Assembly (NCBI RefSeq): GCF_006345805.1
Contig: NC_042999.1
Span: 130,448,001-130,512,000 of the forward strand
Reading direction: 5' to 3'
DNA length: 64,000 bases
From: Octopus sinensis
Lineage: Eukaryota
The notes under the pieces are model-generated. The model was not told the origin of the DNA, did not search any database, and saw only the letters and a list, made by a program, of their open reading frames with translations. Below, piece after piece: positions 6,901-64,000 of this stretch; positions within the stretch are counted from its first letter, which is position 1; every line of letters begins with the position of its first letter. The position numbers and the translations under genes are program-made.

Positions 6901-7344
6901 ATCGGGCAACGTGCCTTTCGGCATAGAGTTATGGCCCATTACGTTCTGAGTTCAATCCTGCTGAGGTTAACTTTACTTTCATCCCTACGGGGTCGATAAA
7001 ATAAAGCACCAGTAATCCACTTTAATCCACTTGTCCCTCCCCACAAATTGTTGGCCTTGTGCCTAAATGAGAAATCATTTAAAATTTTCTAGGCTATCAC
7101 CCTTGATTTTTTTTAAACCAGAATTAATTATTTAGCTTATATATCCAATTTATTTTATAACATATGGTATTATTTGTAATGTTCTTTTTTTTTCATATAT
7201 ATGTATAATATTTTTAACGTAAAATAAAATTATCAGATTCTCCAGCTGTTGTATCAATATGAATAGCTTACAATAAAATTTCACAGGAGATAGATTAGAA
7301 AAATTTAATAAGCGGGGGTGGGCGTTATTCAAGACCCCAGAGTA
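3963..7344 (-). mobile_element. Degenerate pogo-superfamily DNA transposon (CENP-B-type HTH plus DDE_1 transposase, about 6370 to 4445)
   Basis: Fragments GGGRKTKAP...F-DVR, FSNSWMKGWQK, QWSPKGSHRLEQ, YVLDDY, VQVNDIHL, TNAFDGSED; TIR pair TACTCTCGGGTCCCAAATAA (3963) vs reverse complement TACTCTGGGGTCTTGAATAA (ending 7344), 16/20 identical. Confidence 0.8.
6880..7075 (+). mobile_element. SINE family B copy (nested in the pogo element)
   Basis: Shares ttacgttctgagttcaa...ggggtcgataaaataa...ggccttgtgcc with many copies in the window. Confidence 0.8.
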
Positions 7345-7399
7345 TCTCTACAATAGTGCCTGACTTTTGTTCTTTGTCCCAAAGAACAAGGTCGACTCT

Positions 7400-7800
7400 T
7401 GCGTTTATAGCAGATTGCTGTTTTTATAGGAAAGGCCCACCTGTGTTCCTTATTTCTAATGTGTGAGTATATTCTGATTCTTGTGTATCTTTCGTATGAA
7501 CATCAGAACAACCCTTCGTAGTTTTTTTTTTTTTTTTTCTCAGAAACGTCTTGTGAAAAAGTAGCATTTTGCGGACATTTTGAGGTAGCTGGTGATGATG
7601 TGCGATATCTTTCATAACGGTATGACACAACTGACATTTTCTGTCATAACGTAGTGATCTAGAAGCATACTTATTACTTTGATCATATATTTAGAAGTTG
7701 CCTTCTGGGAGAGGCTATTCTTCCGTCTAATGTAGTCGCTACCTCTAATGTTTGGGGATATCTACCCATTCATATCTTTCAGGTGATATGATGAAAGTGT
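7400..7800 (-). mobile_element. RLE-type (R4/Dong-like) non-LTR retrotransposon C-terminal fragment
   Basis: Frameshifted QKATSKYMIK...RKCQLCHTVMKDIAH/HIITSYLKMSAKCY resembles the CCHC finger preceding the restriction-like endonuclease. Confidence 0.5.
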
Positions 7801-8973
7801 CTAAGTTTCTACTGAAGTAGATCAGTTCAGCAAACCTACTTGAACTTGTTCAATAAACACGATGCGAAATTAGAAAGCTGTTTCGACATGGCGTATCTGA
7901 AATGTAATCAGTTCATTTTCAAATTGAATTGACTGGAGTTATTAAATCTGCCGGTGCCTGGCCCACCTGATGAATAGCTAACTATTAGCAACTGTAAATG
8001 CATATCTAAGCATGTTCAAGAGAATTTGTATTTGTGACTCTTCTGTGACTATTAGCTGTTTGAAGATAATTTGTGATGACCGTGCGAATCAAGGTGGCGG
8101 GAATGGCTCTTTAGTACATCACACGGTCGATACAATAAATATAAAATGAATAGCACATGTAAGTGCCTGAGAGAAATAGGAGACAACCGAATAGAATAGT
8201 TAAGATAAGATTTATTGATATGTATACATGTGTGACTGTGTGCGCGTTATGTATACAGAATAATTGACAGGCCGTCATGAGAGCAAAATGTGCATGTGTG
8301 TAAGCATAGATGTATGTTCGTGTGAGGAACATATAAGAACGGCAATGAAGAGAACGATGAAAGAGTCTATAGCCATCGAAGTGAGAAGTTCATAGACACA
8401 AGAATGAGAATAGCAGTTCGTAGTCAAATGTACACGGTAGTTGAAATGCTGTATCAAAAAGTTGCGGCCATGATGCTGAGCCGGTTGCAGGTACATGTAC
8501 GTGAAGTCGTGGCTGTGATGCCGCTGCCTGGGTCACTTGGTACAGGAGTTCTTGCAGGTTATATATTCTCTGTTGATCCATGGTGAAGTAATTCATGAAC
8601 AGAGAAGTGTTGGAACCTGGTAGAGAGATGATGTTGACGACGTTGAAAACATGACGGTGGCGATGATGGAGACTGCCGTAATGCTGTTGGACGAAGTTGT
8701 AAGTCCCAACGTGGCTGCTGCGGTATCGTCGCTAAAACTGGATGTGTGGTCAGTGGCGAGACCTAAAATGGTCTAGAACCAAAAGACCTCGAGATGAGAA
8801 GTTGGGTTTTTATAAGGAGCTGTTCGCTCAAAACTGGGTTGAGAACAGGCTATTTCGCGTGATTTTATTTAGAGGCTGCGATTGGTTATACGCGGCATGT
8901 TGGGGCGACAGAGTAAGAGACAAATTGCATCGATACCAACCAACCAGAGTAGTGGACACGACGTGATCTAAAT

Positions 8974-16560: not shown

Positions 16561-17006
16561 TTAAAATTGAGAGTAGGTACAACTCTTTTGTTTTAGCAAA
16601 TCATCTAATTCTTCTTGAAGTTGATTTTTATAGAATTCTAGTTTACTTATTTCGTTGCTTATCGACCTTAAAGTTAATGGCAACTTATTGAACTCTGTCA
16701 ACCGACATTCAAGAGAATTAGTGTTCTTCACAATTTTGTCTTTAGCTTTCACACTATCCAAAATAGCCCCATGGACAAGTGTTGTGTCAATGCCAGTAGA
16801 TTTGGCTTTTTCCTTTAATGAAGTGAATTTCTGAAAACCATTTTCCAATCCTACAACTGGCTCCTGACAAAAACTGATGGTCCTAGATAATGTAGAATGG
16901 GTCAGGCCGTAGTGGATCTTCATACTCGAGTGGTTGTCAATACTGGGTTTTAATTTGAATTTCTGTTCGGAGACCACCTGCATTTCGTTTTTAAGATTTA
17001 TCAAAG
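16561..17006 (-). CDS. HAUS1: HAUS augmin-like complex subunit 1-like, last coding exon
   Basis: Acceptor ttcgcag at 17007; phase 1 matches the previous exon (A-LINLKNE); GIDTTLVHGAI...LECRLTEFNKLP resembles human GMDASLSHQSL...LKKKLESYLDLMP as recalled; TAA stop. Confidence 0.8.
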
Positions 17007-17806: not shown

Positions 17807-18122
17807 CCATCATATAACTAGTTTCTGATAAACTGTTAAGGTTTAGTAGACGAGCAAGTTCGCATAATATTTCCAGATATTTCTTAGAACATTTGGAATT
17901 GTTACCCACTTCCAGTTCCATAAAGTTTAGCACTCGAGACAAGTTTCTATTTTCAGATTTGTATTCTAAGGCTTTCTGATTTAAATCACTGACTCGGAGT
18001 TCGCTAGTTTTATCCTTGATGTAATTAATATTCATTAACGATCGAAGAATGAACAATGAACGTTCGTTATACTCAAACTTGAAATCATCTAAACCGAGAG
18101 TTTTCTTCAACCAATCAGTAAT
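17807..18122 (-). CDS. HAUS1: HAUS1-like coding exon 2
   Basis: Polypyrimidine-AG acceptor and GTAAGT donor; ITDWLKKTLG...FEYNERSLFIL...DLNQKALEYKSE resembles the HAUS1 N-terminus WLKKIFG...YEVNPRT...DLKQKASEYESE as recalled. Confidence 0.9.
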
Positions 18123-18142: not shown

Positions 18143-18582
18143 AATGGTTTCAGATTTCGGCACAAGGGCCACGATTTCCGTTGGTGGGGGCGGAGTCGAT
18201 TGTATCAACCCCAGTATTCAGCTGGTACTTATTTTATCAATCCTGAAAGGATGAAAAGCAAATTCGACCTTGGCGGAATTTTAACTTAGAACGTAAAAAA
18301 GAACGAAATGCTGTAATGCATTTTGTCCAGTGCGGTAACGATTCTACCATCTAGTCGCCGTAATAATTCTAATTTTGGCACTAAGTCAGTAATTTTAAAG
18401 GTAGGGGAAGTCGACTACATTGACCACAGCACTTCACTAGTGCTTTATTTTATCGACCCTGAAAGGATGAAAGGCAAAACTAATCTCGGCGGAATTTGAA
18501 CAACTCGGAATATAAAGACGTAAGAAAGGCTGCTGAGGATTTGTCCCTCGCGGTAATAATTCTACCAGTTTCACCGCCTTAA
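18143..18582 (-). mobile_element. Two tandem SINE family B copies in HAUS1 intron 1
   Basis: Reverse-complement family motifs at about 18143-18360 and 18365-18582. Confidence 0.8.
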
Positions 18583-19812: not shown

Positions 19813-19851
19813 GTGTGGATCCAATTTTATAGAAACTCTTGGTGTTGCCAT
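19813..19851 (-). CDS. HAUS1: Putative HAUS1-like first coding exon (MATPRVSIKLDPH)
   Basis: gtcATGG start, 13 codons, GTAAGC donor in phase 0 matching exon 2; gives a 266-aa protein, close to the length of known HAUS1; chosen by inference among possible donors. Confidence 0.55.
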
Positions 19852-19960
19852 GACTGGATGCTGAATCAGGGTTCTAAAGGTATTAAACTTCAATTCCGTT
19901 GAGACCCGAAACGTTTAATGCAGAAAAAGCCTCAAGAAGGACGTTAAATATTGATGATAT

Positions 19961-20920
19961 GATTCTTTATTACCCACTAGGGGCGACACAGAGGGGGACA
20001 CCACAAGACATGGGGACATAGAACATTATAATTAAAAATTTATGAAAAATGATAATATGAAAGCGATGCTAAAGGCCCCATCCGTTAGCATCACTTACCT
20101 GTCCTTTGGTTTTCACCGTCACTTGAATGTTCTTTCCCAATACGAATAAATTCCATATCCATTCTTACTCCGAAATACTCATCCATATTTTCCACGAATT
20201 CATCGCTCATTCTTATATCTTTCGCCTCCCAATTCTCCCTTCCACACCTCACCATAAACTCATCTATGTTCTTCTTTTCAATCACAGCATACCTAGTCTC
20301 ACCAACTTCATACCATTTATACTCTTCCATTAGCCTTTTAACTTCATTCTGTTCAGTCATCGTACAAATGTACGGCCTAGGTTCGATTTCAATCTCTCGT
20401 CTGTCTGTATTATATTTTTTCTTTTTTTGTTTTCTTGTTGGGGGGAGCGGGTGTCTGCAGGGATAGGGTGGGACTCAGAGGGTGTGGGTGGTTTTGGGGT
20501 GGATTGGTGTTCCATGTTATTTTCTTTTCCTCGTATTCTTCTCTTCCTCTTCTTTCCAGCTTCCTTCCATTTCTGTGTATTCTCTTCCTCTTCTACTGTC
20601 TCCTTCTCTGGTTTCTGCTTCTCTCTGTGTGGTTCGGAATCCATTTCTTTCCCTGGGGGAGGGCAGAAGGCTCTTATGTGACCCCTCAGGCCACACTTCT
20701 AACAACGTGGAGCTCTGCCCTCCACCCACACTCTCATGACCACGTCTCCCAATCTGATGCTTTCCGCCAGGTCCACCAGTACCTCGTTCTCTGCCTGTAC
20801 GTTCAGCTCCACTGTTACGCCTCTCCAGCCCTCGGTCTTAACCGAGGCATGGAGAATATCCACTTCCTCCTCGTGGCCGCTGATCACAGCCGCCACAATC
20901 CACTCTGCCTCCACGTTTGG
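19961..20920 (-). mobile_element. 5'-truncated second copy of the ORF1-only element (pseudogenised)
   Basis: Near-identical to about 20921-21905; begins at PNVEAEWIV; TAG replaces the Tyr next to the first CCHC Cys; frameshift in a G-run. Confidence 0.9.
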
Positions 20921-22708
20921 TGATTCTTTATTACCCACTAGGGGCGACACAGAGGGGGACACCAAAAGACATGGGGACATAGAACATTATAATTAAAATT
21001 TATGAAAAATGAATTGTTAAGTGAAAGAAAATGATATTATGAAAGCGATACTAACGGCCCCGTCCGTTAGCATCACTTACCTGTCCTTTGTTTTTCATAG
21101 TCACTTGAATGTTCTTTGCCAATACGATTAAATTCCATATCCATTCTTACTCCGAAATACTCATCCATATTTTCCACGAATTCATCGCTCATTCTTATAT
21201 CTTTCACCTCCCAATTCTCCCTTTCACACCTCACCATAAACTCATCAAAGTTCTTCTTTTCAATCACAGCATACCTAGTCTCACCAACTTCATACCATTT
21301 ATACTCTTCCATTAGACTTTTAACTTCTTTCTGTTCAGTCATAGTACAAATGTACGGCCTGATATCGATTTCAATCTCTTGTGTGTGTGTATTCTTTTTT
21401 TTCTTTTGTTTTCTTGTTGGGGGGGAGCGGGTGGGTTCAATGTCTGCATGGATAGGGTGGGACTCAGAGGGCGTGGGTGGTTTTGGGGTGGATTGGAGTT
21501 CCATATTATTTTCTTTTCCACGTATTCTTCTCTTCCTCTTATTCCAGCTTCCTTCCATTTCTGTGTATTCTCTTCTTCTGTTCCTTCTCCTCTGGTTTCT
21601 GCTTCTCTCTCTCTGGTTCGGAATCCATTTCTTTCCCTGGGGAGGGCAGAAGGCTCTTATGTGACCCCTCAGGCCACACTTGTAACAACGTGGAGCCCTG
21701 CCCTCCACCCACACTCTCATAATCACGTTTCCTAGTCTGATGCTTTCCGTCAGGTCCACCAGTACCTCGGTCTCTGCCTGTACGTTCAGCTCCACTGTTA
21801 CGCCTCTCCAGCCCTCGGACTTAACCGAGGCATGGAGAATATCTACTTCGTCCTCGTGGCCGCTGATCACAGCCGCCACAATCCATTCTGCTTCCACGTT
21901 TGGTGGCACTCCCTCCACCCTTATTCGTGTAATCCTCCTGTTTAAATACGTAGGTAACAGTGTTACCTTTTCTGACTTCACCGCCTTCGCCGCCATCTTC
22001 CTCGCTGCAGACTCAGTTTTGAAATGCACAACTACGGTACCGTACTTGGATCCTCGAGTCAGAAAATTTATTTCCTCCTCAGTTCTTCGCAGGGCTTCCT
22101 CTATCCATTCCATGGTTACAACTTCTACCCTCTTCCTTTCGTTTGCGAACACCCTGTAAATAATGGTCCTCTTATCATACCATTCTTTTCTCCTGGGTGT
22201 CGGTGATAGTTCCACCTCACCGCTTTCCTTTTTCATGTATTTCTGGTAACTTGGCAACTTGGCCATGTCGACCCCTTTCTCTTCCGCCTTCTTGGTTACA
22301 CCGGCATAGGTATAACTCAGCTTCTCTTCCAAATTCCTCGCTGCCATTTCTAGCTCCTTCTCAGACGTAGGCGAGTCTGATAAAGACTCGAAAACTCCAG
22401 CCTTTTCTTCCATCAGCTTCATTGCAATTGCCTGTTCCAGTTCCTCATCTGTCGTGGACAAGTCTGTTAGAGACTCATAGTCCATTTCCCTCTGTCTGAC
22501 AGACCGAAAACGGCCGCCAAAACAGAAAAAAGTTTAACGCGCTGAACGAGCGAAACGCGAAACCGCGTCAACGCCGTTCAGAATTTCCACAACAACAACA
22601 ACGCTTTTTGTTCTTTTTTTTCCGAATTTCAGGAGCCTTATTTTGTCCTTATTATATTTCAAATGACGCAAGCAGGATAATTTAGAATAAACCGAGTTAA
22701 CCTTATAA
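20921..22708 (-). mobile_element. L1/Tx1-like non-LTR element carrying ORF1 only
   Basis: CpG-rich 5' leader, one 470-aa ORF, about 150-bp 3' region ending GGGTAATAAAGAATCA; no EN/RT sequence; 5' boundary approximate; no TSD found. Confidence 0.75.
21073..22485 (-). CDS. ORF1/Gag-like nucleic-acid-binding protein (RRM-like region plus CX2CX4HX4C zinc knuckle), 470 aa
   Basis: Uninterrupted ORF; YAGVTK motif, IRVEGVPP...V-VEG-APRCYKCGLRGHIRAFCP, typical of L1/Tx1-clade ORF1. Confidence 0.85.
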   Translation of the reverse strand: MDYESLTDLSTTDEELEQAIAMKLMEEKAGVFESLSDSPTSEKELEMAARNLEEKLSYTYAGVTKKAEEKGVDMAKLPSYQKYMKKESGEVELSPTPRRKEWYDKRTIIYRVFANERKRVEVVTMEWIEEALRRTEEEINFLTRGSKYGTVVVHFKTESAARKMAAKAVKSEKVTLLPTYLNRRITRIRVEGVPPNVEAEWIVAAVISGHEDEVDILHASVKSEGWRGVTVELNVQAETEVLVDLTESIRLGNVIMRVWVEGRAPRCYKCGLRGHIRAFCPPQGKKWIPNQRERSRNQRRRNRRREYTEMEGSWNKRKRRIRGKENNMELQSTPKPPTPSESHPIHADIEPTRSPPTRKQKKKKNTHTQEIEIDIRPYICTMTEQKEVKSLMEEYKWYEVGETRYAVIEKKNFDEFMVRCERENWEVKDIRMSDEFVENMDEYFGVRMDMEFNRIGKEHSSDYEKQRTGK

Positions 22709-23075: not shown

Positions 23076-23377
23076 TGGAGACACATTGCCTAGTGGTTAG
23101 AGTAGCGGACTCGCGGTCGAGGGATCACAGGTTCGAATCTCAGACCGGGCGGTGTGTGTGTTTATAAGCGAAACACCTAAGCTCCACGCGGCTCCGGCAG
23201 AAGGTAATGGCGAACTTCTGCTGACTCTTTCGTCATAACTTTCTCTCACTCTTTCCTCCTGCATCTAGCAGCTCACCTGCGACGGACCGGCGTCCCATCC
23301 AGGTGAGGAACCTATACGCCAAGGAAACCGGGAAACTGGCCCTTATGAGCCAGGCGTGGCTCGAGGAGGAACAAACA
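23076..23377 (+). mobile_element. Full-length tRNA-derived SINE family C with TSD
   Basis: A/B-box head (TAGTGGTTAG...GGTTCGAATC); 13-bp TSD ACATTGGACTGTG at 23063-23075 and 23378-23390. Confidence 0.9.
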
Positions 23378-23690: not shown

Positions 23691-23895
23691 GTAAGGCGGC
23701 AGAATCGTTAGCACGCTGCGCAAAATAGTTGGCGGCATTTCGTCCGTATTTACGTTCCAAGTTCAAATTCCGCTGAGGTTGACTTTGCCCCTTTCGGGGT
23801 CGATGAAATAAGTACCAGTCGAGCACTGGGATCGATGAAATCGATTTAACCCATCCCCCAAACTTGCTGGTTTTGTGCCAAAGTTTGAAACCAAT
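23691..23895 (+). mobile_element. SINE family B copy
   Basis: Family motifs present. Confidence 0.85.
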
Positions 23896-26129: not shown

Positions 26130-26322
26130 TAAAGCGACGAGTTGGCAGAATGTTTGGTGTCATTTCGTCTGTCTTTGTTCTGAGTTCAAATTCTGCTGGG
26201 GTCGGTTTTCCTTTCATCTTTTCGGAGTCGATAAAATAAGTACCAGAGGATAACTGGGATCGATGTAATTGACTTACTTCCGCTCCCGAATTTACTAGCC
26301 TTGTGCCAAAATCTGAAATCAA
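26130..26322 (+). mobile_element. SINE family B copy
   Basis: Family motifs present. Confidence 0.85.
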
Positions 26323-42813: not shown

Positions 42814-43070
42814 GTGGAGGCACATGGCTTAGTGGCTAGGGTGTCAGTATCATGATTGTAAGATTGTGGTTTCGATTCCTGGACCAGGCGACGCGTTGTG
42901 TTCTTGAGCAAAACACTTCATTTCAAGTTGCTCCAGTCCACTCAGCTGGCAAAAATGAGTAACGCTGCAATGGACTGGCATCCCGTCCAACTGAGGAACA
43001 CATATGCCATAGAAACCGGGAAACTGGGCCCATGGGCCTGAACAGGCTTTAAAAGGGTGCATTTTCTTTT
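42814..43070 (+). mobile_element. tRNA-derived SINE (family C-like, CORE-like middle) with TSD
   Basis: 13-bp TSD TATATGCAATAAT at 42801-42813 and 43071-43083. Confidence 0.9.
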
Positions 43071-63926: not shown

Positions 63927-64000
63927 TAGGAGGCGCAATGGCCCAGTGGTTAGGGCAGCGGACTCGCAGCCATAGGATCGCGGTTTCGATTCCCAGACCG
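63927..64000 (+). mobile_element. tRNA-derived SINE family C head (cut by window end)
   Basis: GGAGGCGCAATGGCCCAGTGGTTAG...GGTTTCGATTCCCAGACCG, similar to 23076. Confidence 0.8.

What the first reader, a model, noticed from the sequence alone, without database searches (positions are those of the whole stretch)
19813..22708. The ORF1 element pair sits about 110 bp upstream of the putative HAUS1 start codon, same strand, and carries a consensus splice donor
Seen: the element 3' end is at 19961 and the putative HAUS1 ATG at 19851. Both copies end ORF1 with CAG|GTAAGT (donors at 21080 and 20098, phase 1). A candidate acceptor cctttag lies at 19874, just before the ATG, and HAUS1 exon 3 also has a phase-1 acceptor (17006). 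Inference: the insertion separates HAUS1 from upstream sequence and adds two AATAAA signals. HAUS1 may therefore rely on a tiny proximal promoter, be driven from the element's CpG-rich internal promoter through a spliced leader, or yield an in-frame ORF1-HAUS1(exon 3) chimera linking an RNA-binding retro-protein to an augmin coiled-coil.
Basis: partly seen in the sequence, partly recalled or inferred. Interest (0 to 1): 0.7.

Follow-up and report, generated by a model that had tools for sequence, protein, structure and literature searches.

The report
Retroelement insertion upstream of octopus HAUS1
A LINE-type retroelement that encodes only ORF1 sits 108 bp upstream of the octopus HAUS1 start codon as one full copy plus one 5'-truncated copy, and it carries a perfect splice donor that one public annotation joins in frame to HAUS1. 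No data here show that such a fusion transcript is made, so this is a fairly ordinary transposon-next-to-gene case with some interesting side features.

Summary
The window is Octopus sinensis chromosome CM016861.1.

On the minus strand, a 1.72-kb retroelement unit (22637-20922) is followed head-to-tail by a 5'-truncated unit (20921-19960). The full unit holds a CpG-rich 5'UTR, an intact 470-aa ORF1 and a 150-nt tail. The pair ends 108 bp before the ATG of a three-exon, 266-aa HAUS1 gene.

The family has no ORF2. It shows variable 5' truncation with a fixed 3' end, forms tandem arrays, and is related to an L1-like octopus LINE.

The CAG|GTAAGT donor overlaps the ORF1 stop codon and is present in every copy examined.

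The O. vulgaris annotation contains a model (P0005) that splices this donor in frame to an AG 2 nt before the HAUS1 ATG (window 19854). The model is of poor quality and comes from a single pipeline. The O. sinensis and O. bimaculoides models show no chimera.

The full copy is specific to O. sinensis. O. vulgaris has a single element at this site, and its 5' half carries an ADAR-type A>G hyperediting footprint.

Verdict: a real, ordinary TE insertion; functional coupling to HAUS1 is unproven.

The parts
20922..22637 (-). Full-length unit (copy 1) of an ORF1-only LINE-type element. It is O. sinensis-specific from about element position 120 onward.
   Evidence: Aligns end to end (positions 84/92-1799) with 11 other units in O. 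vulgaris loci L002 and L003 at 95-96.5% identity. It is absent as such from the orthologous O. vulgaris locus L001.
22486..22637 (-). Element 5'UTR, CpG-rich; candidate internal promoter.
   Evidence: 15 CpG in 151 nt, o/e 1.93, against 0.47 for the whole window. Promoter activity was not tested.
21073..22485 (-). Intact ORF1 of 470 aa: N-terminal helices, a tandem RRM-like core, a CCHC knuckle (CYKCGLRGHIRAFC), a basic helix, and a C-terminal domain (CTD, aa 382-470).
   Evidence: ORF listing. AlphaFold model with pLDDT >90 for aa 70-290. Best Foldseek matches are tandem-RRM proteins such as IMP3 RRM12 and hnRNP A1 UP1, E about 1e-4. The zf-CCHC match is weak in the query but significant in relatives. 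348 relatives at E<=1e-3.
21072..21083 (-). Copy-1 donor CAG|GTAAGTGA (GT at 21080-21079). It overlaps the last codons and the stop of ORF1; phase 1.
   Evidence: Sequence. The motif is present in all 15 other copies examined.
21043..21078 (-). 15-bp hairpin immediately 3' of the ORF1 end. It includes donor positions +3 to +6.
   Evidence: RNA fold of the tail: MFE -35.5 kcal/mol, z-score -1.95. The stem is kept, with wobble changes, in other copies.
20922..21072 (-). Copy-1 3' tail with AATAAA at 20932-20927. The last ~115 nt resemble the 3' end of an autonomous L1-like octopus LINE.
   Evidence: shared motif GTCCCC..GCCCCTNGTGGGTAA(A)TAAA.
19960..20921 (-). Copy 2: 5'-truncated unit (element positions 816-1799), shared with O. 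vulgaris at 99.5% identity.
   Evidence: Stop codon TAG at 20701-20699 in the knuckle (TAC in O. vulgaris), plus frame changes.
20091..20360 (-). Copy-2 CTD ORF (89 aa, MTEQNEV...QRTGK*). Its first 87 codons form the 5' exon of the O. vulgaris chimeric model.
20090..20101 (-). Copy-2 donor CAG|GTAAGTGA (GT at 20098-20097), phase 1.
   Evidence: Used as the donor in P0005 at the orthologous position, L001 10262|10263.
19966..19971 (-). AATAAA at the copy-2 3' end.
19852..19959 (-). 108-bp spacer between the element end and the HAUS1 ATG. It holds a TATA-like TATTTAA (19950-19944), a CA at 19920-19919, AG acceptors ending at 19874 (out of frame) and at 19854 (in frame), and a Kozak-like context gtcATGg.
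   Evidence: Sequence reading and frame tests. The promoter reading is inference only.
19813..19851 (-). Putative HAUS1 coding exon 1 (MATPRVSIKLDPH), phase 0, donor cac|gtaagc.
   Evidence: Identical in O. vulgaris and used in P0005. It is needed because Pfam HAUS1 profile position 2 aligns to the first residue of exon 2. It is not included in the RefSeq or O. bimaculoides models.
17807..18122 (-). HAUS1 exon 2.
   Evidence: Pfam PF25762 E=5e-16. 100% identical to O. sinensis LOC115209533.
16561..17006 (-). HAUS1 exon 3 (last coding exon, stop codon included), with a phase-1 acceptor.

Best explanation
This is a promoter-proximal insertion of a non-autonomous, ORF1-only LINE derivative upstream of HAUS1 in Octopus sinensis.

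The element. The unit is 1.72 kb and consists of a 5'UTR, ORF1 and a ~150-nt LINE 3' tail. It lies in the same orientation as HAUS1. It is comparable to mammalian HAL1 and is related to an L1-like octopus LINE.

History of the pair. An older full-length copy inserted 108 bp upstream of the HAUS1 ATG before O. sinensis and O. vulgaris split. In the O. sinensis lineage, element positions ~120-815 of that copy were replaced by a younger complete copy. The likely route is a new retrotransposition into position 815/816, with the 5' end resolved by homology in the shared 5'UTR, or an insertion followed by recombination. The result is the present 'full + 5'-truncated' pair.

The donor. The perfect CAG|GTAAGT donor is a family-wide feature that overlaps the ORF1 stop codon.

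HAUS1 expression. HAUS1 (3 coding exons, 266 aa) most likely keeps its own short first exon and start codon. It is probably transcribed from a start site in the 108-bp spacer or the element's 3' end. Element-initiated read-through transcripts spliced from 20099 to 19853 (an in-frame, N-terminally extended HAUS1) would be at most a minor isoform.

Shown here: the anatomy, the family relationships, the species difference and the reading frames. Inferred: the transcription start, whether the donor is used, and the route of the replacement.
For: - Identity of the locus: 100% match to O. sinensis CM016861.1. The flanks are 99.6-99.8% identical to O. vulgaris OX597816.1.
- HAUS1: PF25762 at 87 bits against a cut-off of 40. 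The profile begins at the first residue of exon 2.
- Element family: constant 3' end with variable 5' truncation, at positions 816, 1009, 1285 and 1477. Arrays of 9 units. No ORF2 within the unit.
- ORF1p: tandem RRM-like core plus a CCHC knuckle.
- Relation to a LINE: 32% identity (E=3e-43) to the ORF1 of a LINE whose ORF2 has APE, RT and zf-RVT domains and best matches human L1 ORF2p at 2e-71. The two share a 3'-terminal motif.
- Replacement history: O. vulgaris has one element. Its 3' part equals copy 2 at 99.5%. Its 5' part differs from copy 1 by 86 substitutions in 573 bp. Private non-A>G divergence is about 3.7% for both the O. vulgaris 5' part and copy 2, against about 1.5% for copy 1. 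The first ~55 nt of the 5'UTR are shared.
- Donor: present in 15 of 15 other copies.
- Frames of all candidate junctions.
- The ATG context gtcATGg and the TATA-like box 31 nt upstream of a CA.
Against: - No transcript data could be consulted, so the transcription start and the real use of exon 1 are unverified.
- The RefSeq O. sinensis model and the O. bimaculoides model both start at an internal Met in exon 2, so exon 1 has no support from them.
- The only model that uses exon 1 is the chimeric P0005. This could mean that the element-derived transcript is the main one.
- No target-site duplication was found.
- The autonomous partner was not identified.
- The direction of the species difference rests on divergence counts against a consensus dominated by one array (L003).
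Confidence: 0.6

Rival explanations
1. The element has been co-opted as the HAUS1 promoter and first exon. Transcription starts in the element, the donor at 20098 is spliced to the AG at 19854, and HAUS1 is made with an 88-residue N-terminal extension derived from the ORF1 C-terminal domain, as in the O. vulgaris model.
For: - P0005 has exactly this junction, with canonical GT-AG introns.
- The junction is in frame in O. sinensis too and gives a 354-aa ORF.
- The insertion, the donor, the acceptor and the CTD ORF are conserved in both species.
- Many O. vulgaris models start with the same exon and run into short junk tails. This is what ORF calling on real spliced transcripts would produce.
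- That annotation used Iso-Seq and RNA-seq through PASA and TransDecoder (PMC10700109).
Against: - All such models come from one pipeline, which also ran ab initio predictors on a repeat-masked genome.
- Models made of CTD exons alone, joined across array units (P0001, P0002), look like unmasked islands stitched together.
- P0005 omits the conserved C-terminal 120 aa of HAUS1.
- P0005 starts at an internal Met although the 468-aa ORF is open upstream in O. vulgaris.
- The acceptor at 19854 has a poor polypyrimidine tract.
- Part of the donor lies inside a 15-bp hairpin.
- No HAUS1-containing protein derived from a transcriptome exists in the 15-billion-protein collection.
- Between the two species the CTD shows one non-synonymous change and no sign of constraint.
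Confidence: 0.25
2. One reading: ORF1 (from either donor) spliced to the phase-1 acceptor at 17006, fusing an RNA-binding ORF1 protein to the C-terminal coiled coil of HAUS1.
For: Both joins are in frame and open to the HAUS1 stop codon: 616 aa from copy 1 and 234 aa from copy 2.
Against: - It needs two good intervening exons and the very strong exon-2 acceptor to be skipped.
- It removes HAUS1 profile positions 2-134.
- From copy 2, only the 87-aa CTD would be fused, not the RRM and knuckle part.
- No database model has this join.
Confidence: 0.03
3. The putative exon 1 is not the real first exon. HAUS1 either starts elsewhere (for example upstream of the element) or is translated from the internal Met MNINYI, as in the RefSeq model. 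In that case the distance of 108 bp has no meaning.
For: Two independent annotations, O. sinensis RefSeq P0006 and O. bimaculoides P0007, start at MNINYI in exon 2.
Against: - The 29 residues of exon 2 upstream of that Met align to positions 2-30 of the HAUS1 profile, including the WLKK motif, so they are coding and need an upstream ATG.
- Exon 1 supplies an ATG in phase 0, with a good donor and a good Kozak context, and it is identical in O. vulgaris.
- A transcript spliced from the element donor straight to exon 2 would give DY* and then the internal Met. This would also explain those two models.
Confidence: 0.1
4. The pair arose in one step: either a local tandem duplication, or template switching by the reverse transcriptase during a single insertion. 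The O. vulgaris single copy would then be a later deletion.
For: - Head-to-tail arrays are typical of this family and of its autonomous relative.
- Copy 1 abuts copy 2 without any spacer.
Against: - The copies differ by 7-9.5% while the two species differ by 0.2-0.4%.
- A deletion by unequal crossover would leave a copy-1-like 5' part in O. vulgaris. Instead that part differs by 15%: 4.7% after removing A>G changes, with private non-A>G divergence matching that of copy 2.
Confidence: 0.1

Closest known systems
HAL1 ('half-L1') elements of mammals: non-autonomous L1 derivatives that keep ORF1 and lack ORF2 (from my own knowledge; mentioned in PMC5753468 and PMC4161310, seen only as search hits)
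   Same: The unit consists of a 5'UTR, ORF1 and a LINE 3' end, with no reverse transcriptase or endonuclease. There are multiple copies with variable 5' truncation and a fixed 3' end. ORF1 is related to that of an L1-like LINE.
   Different: The ORF1p here has a tandem RRM-like core plus a CCHC knuckle, not the coiled-coil/RRM/CTD protein of mammalian L1. There is no poly(A) tail. The family has a strong tendency to form head-to-tail arrays. It is a cephalopod lineage, and the autonomous partner is not identified.
TE-initiated or TE-spliced chimeric gene transcripts, such as L1 splice sites and promoters producing fusion transcripts, and TE-derived alternative first exons (from my own knowledge)
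   Same: A sense-oriented retroelement lies just upstream of a gene, with a CpG-rich 5' region, an ATG-initiated ORF, a consensus donor and a downstream in-frame acceptor. An annotated chimeric model exists in a sister species.
   Different: No transcript evidence is available here. The donor is part of the element's own stop-codon region and is conserved in all copies. The supporting model is of poor quality.
Autonomous L1-like LINE of Octopus vulgaris at OX597840.1 (locus L005)
   Same: ORF1 is 32% identical (E=3e-43). The 3'-terminal motif is shared. It also forms head-to-tail arrays.
   Different: It carries a 1132-aa ORF2 with APE, RT and zf-RVT domains. It is too divergent to be shown to be the mobilising partner.
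Genomic footprints of ADAR-edited retroelement RNA (A>G clusters fixed in DNA; concept from my own knowledge; PMC2873906 seen by title and abstract only)
   Same: The O. vulgaris orthologous copy has 60 strand-specific A>G changes in 520 nt, with depletion of G at the 5' neighbouring base.
   Different: It is seen here in a cephalopod LINE derivative, and the edited part has been replaced in the sister species. This is a side observation and not part of the HAUS1 claim.

Membership tests
Non-LTR (LINE-type) retroelement | Copies share a fixed 3' end and are variably truncated at the 5' end | tested here: met
   Truncation points are 816 (window copy 2) and 1009, 1285 and 1477 (L002). All copies end at ...GGGTAATAAAGAA...
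Non-LTR (LINE-type) retroelement | ORF1 protein of LINE type (RRM-like domains and/or a CCHC knuckle) | tested here: met
   The AlphaFold core has pLDDT >90, and Foldseek gives tandem-RRM matches at E about 1e-4. The CX2CX4HX4C motif is present. Pfam zf-CCHC scores only E=0.08 in the query but passes in relatives P0119 and P0027.
Non-LTR (LINE-type) retroelement | Reverse transcriptase and endonuclease ORF2 | tested here: not met
   The 1.72-kb unit repeats back to back in arrays with nothing between ORF1 and the tail, so the element is non-autonomous.
Non-LTR (LINE-type) retroelement | Target-site duplication flanking the insertion | tested here: inconclusive
   No direct repeat of at least 9 nt with at most 1 mismatch was found next to the ends. 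It may have decayed or may never have been present.
HAL1-like ORF1-only derivative of an L1-clade LINE | 3' end and ORF1 derived from an autonomous L1-clade LINE of the same genome | tested here: inconclusive
   ORF1 is 32% identical to that of the L005 LINE. That LINE's ORF2 best matches human L1 ORF2p at 2e-71 and has a zf-RVT domain. The last ~50 nt are similar. No close partner was found, and no RT phylogeny was made.
HAUS1 (augmin complex subunit 1) | Match to Pfam PF25762 above the gathering score | tested here: met
   87.2 bits against a cut-off of 40, profile positions 2-134, for the 266-aa three-exon product. 100% identical to O. sinensis LOC115209533 over 224 aa.
TE-gene chimeric transcript / TE-derived first exon | Consensus donor in the TE and a compatible in-frame acceptor in the gene | tested here: met
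   Donors at 21080 and 20098. The acceptor AG at 19855-19854 gives an open 354-aa (copy 2) or 735-aa (copy 1) fusion ORF. The acceptor at 19874 and the exon-2 acceptor are out of frame.
TE-gene chimeric transcript / TE-derived first exon | Transcript reads or cDNA spanning the TE-gene junction | not testable with these tools
   Only an annotation model in O. vulgaris (P0005) is available. No transcriptome-derived HAUS1 protein exists in the collection.
TE-gene chimeric transcript / TE-derived first exon | Promoter activity of the TE 5' region | not testable with these tools
   Only CpG o/e 1.93 over 151 nt.
ADAR-hyperedited retrocopy (side observation, O. vulgaris locus) | Dense strand-specific A>G cluster relative to the family consensus, with depletion of G at the 5' neighbouring base | tested here: met
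   60 A>G changes at element positions 280-799. At 57 of the 59 A/G differences between the species, the family consensus agrees with O. sinensis (A). A 5' G neighbour occurs at 6 of 60 edited As and at 62 of 130 unedited As, Fisher p=2e-7.

The most novel reading that the evidence does not exclude
The last 270 nt of this element family would act as a mobile 'start codon + small domain + perfect splice donor' cassette. Driven by the element's own CpG-rich promoter or by an internal start site, it would trap downstream genes. HAUS1, an essential spindle gene, would then be expressed in O. vulgaris and O. sinensis partly or mainly as an N-terminally tagged fusion from this cassette, with the insertion having taken over promoter function.
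Probability: 0.12. Interest if true: 0.6.

Novelty: new member of a known kind. Interest (0 to 1): 0.35.

Why it matters
If element-driven, in-frame HAUS1 transcripts are real, this would be a clear invertebrate example of a LINE-derived cassette supplying the promoter, start codon and first exon to an essential housekeeping gene. It would be conserved in two octopus species, and it belongs to a family whose donor seems to tag many loci. That bears on how the large retroelement load of octopus genomes shapes their transcriptomes.

If they are not real, the locus still gives three things:
- a warning that one public annotation stitches retroelement ORFs onto host genes;
- a description of an ORF1-only, array-forming LINE derivative in cephalopods;
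- a dated structural difference between O. sinensis and O. vulgaris that includes an ADAR-edited retrocopy.

Tried and rejected
- tRNA and Rfam scans of the region found nothing.
- A sequence search of ORF1p against the PDB returned only retroviral zinc knuckles at E>0.1.
- The weak Pfam 'Ephrin' match of the CTD (E=0.001, below the cut-off) and the other sub-threshold matches were treated as chance.
- The O. bimaculoides locus, which would have served as an outgroup or an empty site, could not be retrieved: P0007 is not on record.
- The HAUS1 protein search found only three gene models and no transcriptome-derived sequence, so there is no independent check of the junction.
- No TSD was found.
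- A simple tandem duplication or unequal-crossover origin of the species difference was rejected, because the O. vulgaris 5' part is not copy-1-like.
- G>A (APOBEC-type) hypermutation of the O. sinensis copy was rejected, because the family consensus has A at 57 of the 59 A/G sites.
- The APE-containing tail of model P0004 lies about 11 kb away from the element and was not taken as this element's ORF2.
- The sigma-70 promoter scanner was not used, since it does not apply to an animal genome.
Full report
**Observation**

Read on the minus strand, the region holds two head-to-tail copies of one element. Repeat finding and self-BLAST show that 20921-19960 matches 21905-20921 at 90.5% over 995 aligned columns.

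- CAG|GTAAGT with the G of GT at 21080 and at 20098, both in phase 1.
- Element end ...GGGTAATAAAGAATCA at 19961/19960.
- ATG at 19851; exon 1 donor after 19813.
- cctttag ending at 19874.
- Exon 2 from 18122 and exon 3 from 17006 (phase 1).
- AATAAA at 20932-20927 and at 19971-19966.

The element 5'UTR has 15 CpG in 151 nt (o/e 1.93, against 0.47 for the window). The full 9-mer MAG|GTRAGT occurs only four times on both strands of the window. The donor motif is present in all 15 other copies I could examine. It is therefore a property of the family and not chance at this site.

**Where the window comes from, and the gene**

The ORF1 and HAUS1 protein searches hit only Octopus proteins. The O. 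sinensis locus fetched through P0006 is 100% identical to the window over 21,475 bp: CM016861.1, assembly GCA_006345805.1.

The three exons 19851-19813, 18122-17807 and 17006-16561 give a 266-aa protein. It matches Pfam HAUS1 at 87 bits against a cut-off of 40. The profile starts at the first residue of exon 2.

The O. sinensis RefSeq model (224 aa) and the O. bimaculoides model both start at an internal Met in exon 2. The 29 residues before that Met match the profile, so an upstream ATG exon is required. Exon 1 is the obvious candidate: it is in phase 0, has a gtaagc donor and a gtcATGg context, and is identical in O. vulgaris. Among existing models, however, only the chimeric one supports it.

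**What the element is**

The other copies come from three O. vulgaris loci. They show:
- a unit of about 1715 bp that begins at window 22637, not at 22708;
- a constant 3' end;
- variable 5' truncation, at element positions 816, 1009, 1285 and 1477;
- long head-to-tail arrays, nine units in L003, with the 3' end abutting the 5' end.

There is no ORF2 in the unit.

ORF1p (470 aa) has 348 relatives at E<=1e-3. Its model has a confident core (pLDDT >90, aa 70-290). The best structural matches are tandem-RRM proteins. A CCHC knuckle, a long basic helix and a poorly predicted C-terminal domain follow the core.

One relative, P0014 (32% identity, E=3e-43), is the ORF1 of an autonomous, also arrayed, O. 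vulgaris LINE. Its 1132-aa ORF2 has APE, RT and zf-RVT domains and best matches human L1 ORF2p at 2e-71. The last ~50-115 nt of that LINE resemble the tail of this element.

I therefore file the element as an ORF1-only, HAL1-like derivative of an L1-like LINE lineage. Its mobilising partner is unidentified, and no TSD was found.

A 15-bp hairpin follows the ORF1 stop codon directly and includes donor positions +3 to +6.

**The chimera question**

P0005, an O. vulgaris gene model, is the ORF1 C-terminal domain (MTEQ...QRT) joined to V-MATPRVSIKLDPH, then exon 2 and part of exon 3. Mapped onto the O. vulgaris locus, the first intron runs from ACAG|GTAAGT to CATCCAG|TCATGG. In window terms this is 20099^19853, an AG that ends 2 nt before the HAUS1 ATG.

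In O. sinensis the candidate junctions behave as follows:

| Junction | Result |
|---|---|
| 20099 (copy 2) to 19853 | open, 354 aa |
| 21081 (copy 1) to 19853 | open, 735 aa |
| either donor to 18122 (exon 2) | DY*, out of frame |
| either donor to 17006 (exon 3) | in frame |

The exon-3 join would discard the conserved N-terminal half of HAUS1.

The weight of P0005 as evidence is limited:
- It replaces the conserved last 120 aa of HAUS1 by an odd downstream exon.
- It starts at an internal Met although the upstream ORF is open in O. vulgaris.
- It and at least 12 similar models that start with the same exon all come from one annotation.
- That pipeline combined Iso-Seq and RNA-seq assemblies with ab initio predictors run on a repeat-masked genome (PMC10700109).

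The short junk tails of many of these models fit ORF calling on real spliced transcripts. The models made of CTD exons alone, joined across array units, fit stitching of unmasked islands instead. I put the chance that the HAUS1 junction is really used at about one in three. The chance that it is the main or a functional form is much lower.

**Species difference**

The O. vulgaris flanks are 99.6-99.8% identical to the window, but O. vulgaris has a single full-length element at this site.
- Its 3' part equals copy 2 at 99.5% identity.
- Its ORF1 N-terminal part differs from copy 1 by 86 substitutions in 573 bp. Of these, 59 are A (O. sinensis) to G (O. vulgaris) on the sense strand.
- At 57 of those 59 sites the family consensus has A.
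- Measured against the family consensus, the O. vulgaris copy has 60 A>G changes, spanning element positions 280-799.
- A G is the 5' neighbouring base at 6 of 60 edited As but at 62 of 130 unedited As (p=2e-7).

This is the signature of an ADAR-hyperedited RNA that was reverse-transcribed and inserted.

Private non-A>G divergence is the same, about 3.7%, for this 5' part and for copy 2, and about 1.5% for copy 1. The first ~55 nt of the 5'UTR are shared between the two species.

The simplest history is one old insertion shared by both species. In the O. sinensis lineage, positions ~120-815 were later replaced by a younger complete copy that ends precisely at position 815/816. The 'pair' is therefore lineage-specific. 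The unit next to HAUS1, with its donor, the spacer and exon 1, is shared.

**Conclusion**

The thing itself is an ordinary kind of event: a retroelement inserted just upstream of a gene, in sense orientation, with splice and polyadenylation signals.

The claim of functional coupling to HAUS1 is plausible and has one weak independent hint, but it remains untested. It needs junction reads or 5' end mapping.

Noticed in passing
L001 8900-9420 (O. vulgaris OX597816.1, orthologous element; corresponds to window 22440-21920): There are 60 sense-strand A>G changes relative to the family consensus within 520 nt, with strong depletion of G at the 5' neighbouring base. This is the footprint of an ADAR-hyperedited retroelement RNA fixed in DNA. 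The 468-aa ORF is still open.
   Followed up: yes
window 22520-20922 versus L001 8750-9436: O. sinensis carries a younger complete copy where O. vulgaris has the edited 5' part. This is a net +983 bp structural difference between sister species whose flanks are 99.6-99.8% identical.
   Followed up: yes
L003 5249-20832; L005 4058-14283: The ORF1-only family forms a nine-unit head-to-tail array whose junctions follow a higher-order 9/23/23-nt pattern. A related autonomous L1-like LINE is also arranged head to tail.
   Followed up: partly
O. vulgaris proteins P0001-P0004, P0008, P0009, P0011-P0013, P0015-P0018, P0037: At least 12 'hypothetical predicted protein' models start with, or contain, the 87-aa CTD exon. 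They use the same QRT|GTAAGT donor and run into unrelated or junk sequence, including a hydin-like gene and transposase fragments.
   Followed up: partly
window 21078-21043 (minus strand): A 15-bp hairpin lies directly after the ORF1 stop codon and partly covers the splice donor. It is kept, with wobble changes, in other copies.
   Followed up: partly
L003 units, e.g. 6978-8688: In most array units the reading frame is split into a 383-aa ORF and the 89-aa CTD ORF, overlapping by ATGA. In window copy 1 and in one array unit it is a single ORF of 470-472 aa. Frames also differ between copies in the basic linker.
   Followed up: partly
window 19470-19198 (minus strand, HAUS1 intron 1): A 90-aa ORF (..GRPRIILPDVIGEDLQKHDIALEDAKGLVRDRQRWRTLV..) looks like the C-terminal end of a LINE ORF2. 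It has no Pfam hit and no other copy in the window.
   Followed up: partly
window 23087-23150 (plus strand): A tRNA-like head with A-box and B-box motifs (GCCTAGTGGTTAGAG...GGTTCGAATC) is probably a tRNA-derived SINE. ARAGORN and Rfam are negative. Partial relatives lie at 42965-43030 and 63938-64000.
   Followed up: partly
window 18195-18300, 18445-18501, 23749-23844, 26177-26273: Copies of a short interspersed repeat (75-82% identical); two of them are inside HAUS1 intron 1.
   Followed up: no
window about 19690-19655: An (AT)n microsatellite in HAUS1 intron 1.
   Followed up: no
L001 13437-15290 (window about 16920-15070): The O. vulgaris HAUS1 model leaves exon 3 at an internal GTATGA donor and ends in a small exon 1.75 kb downstream. 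That exon has a strong acceptor and lies beyond the normal stop codon. This is either an alternative 3' isoform or an annotation error.
   Followed up: partly
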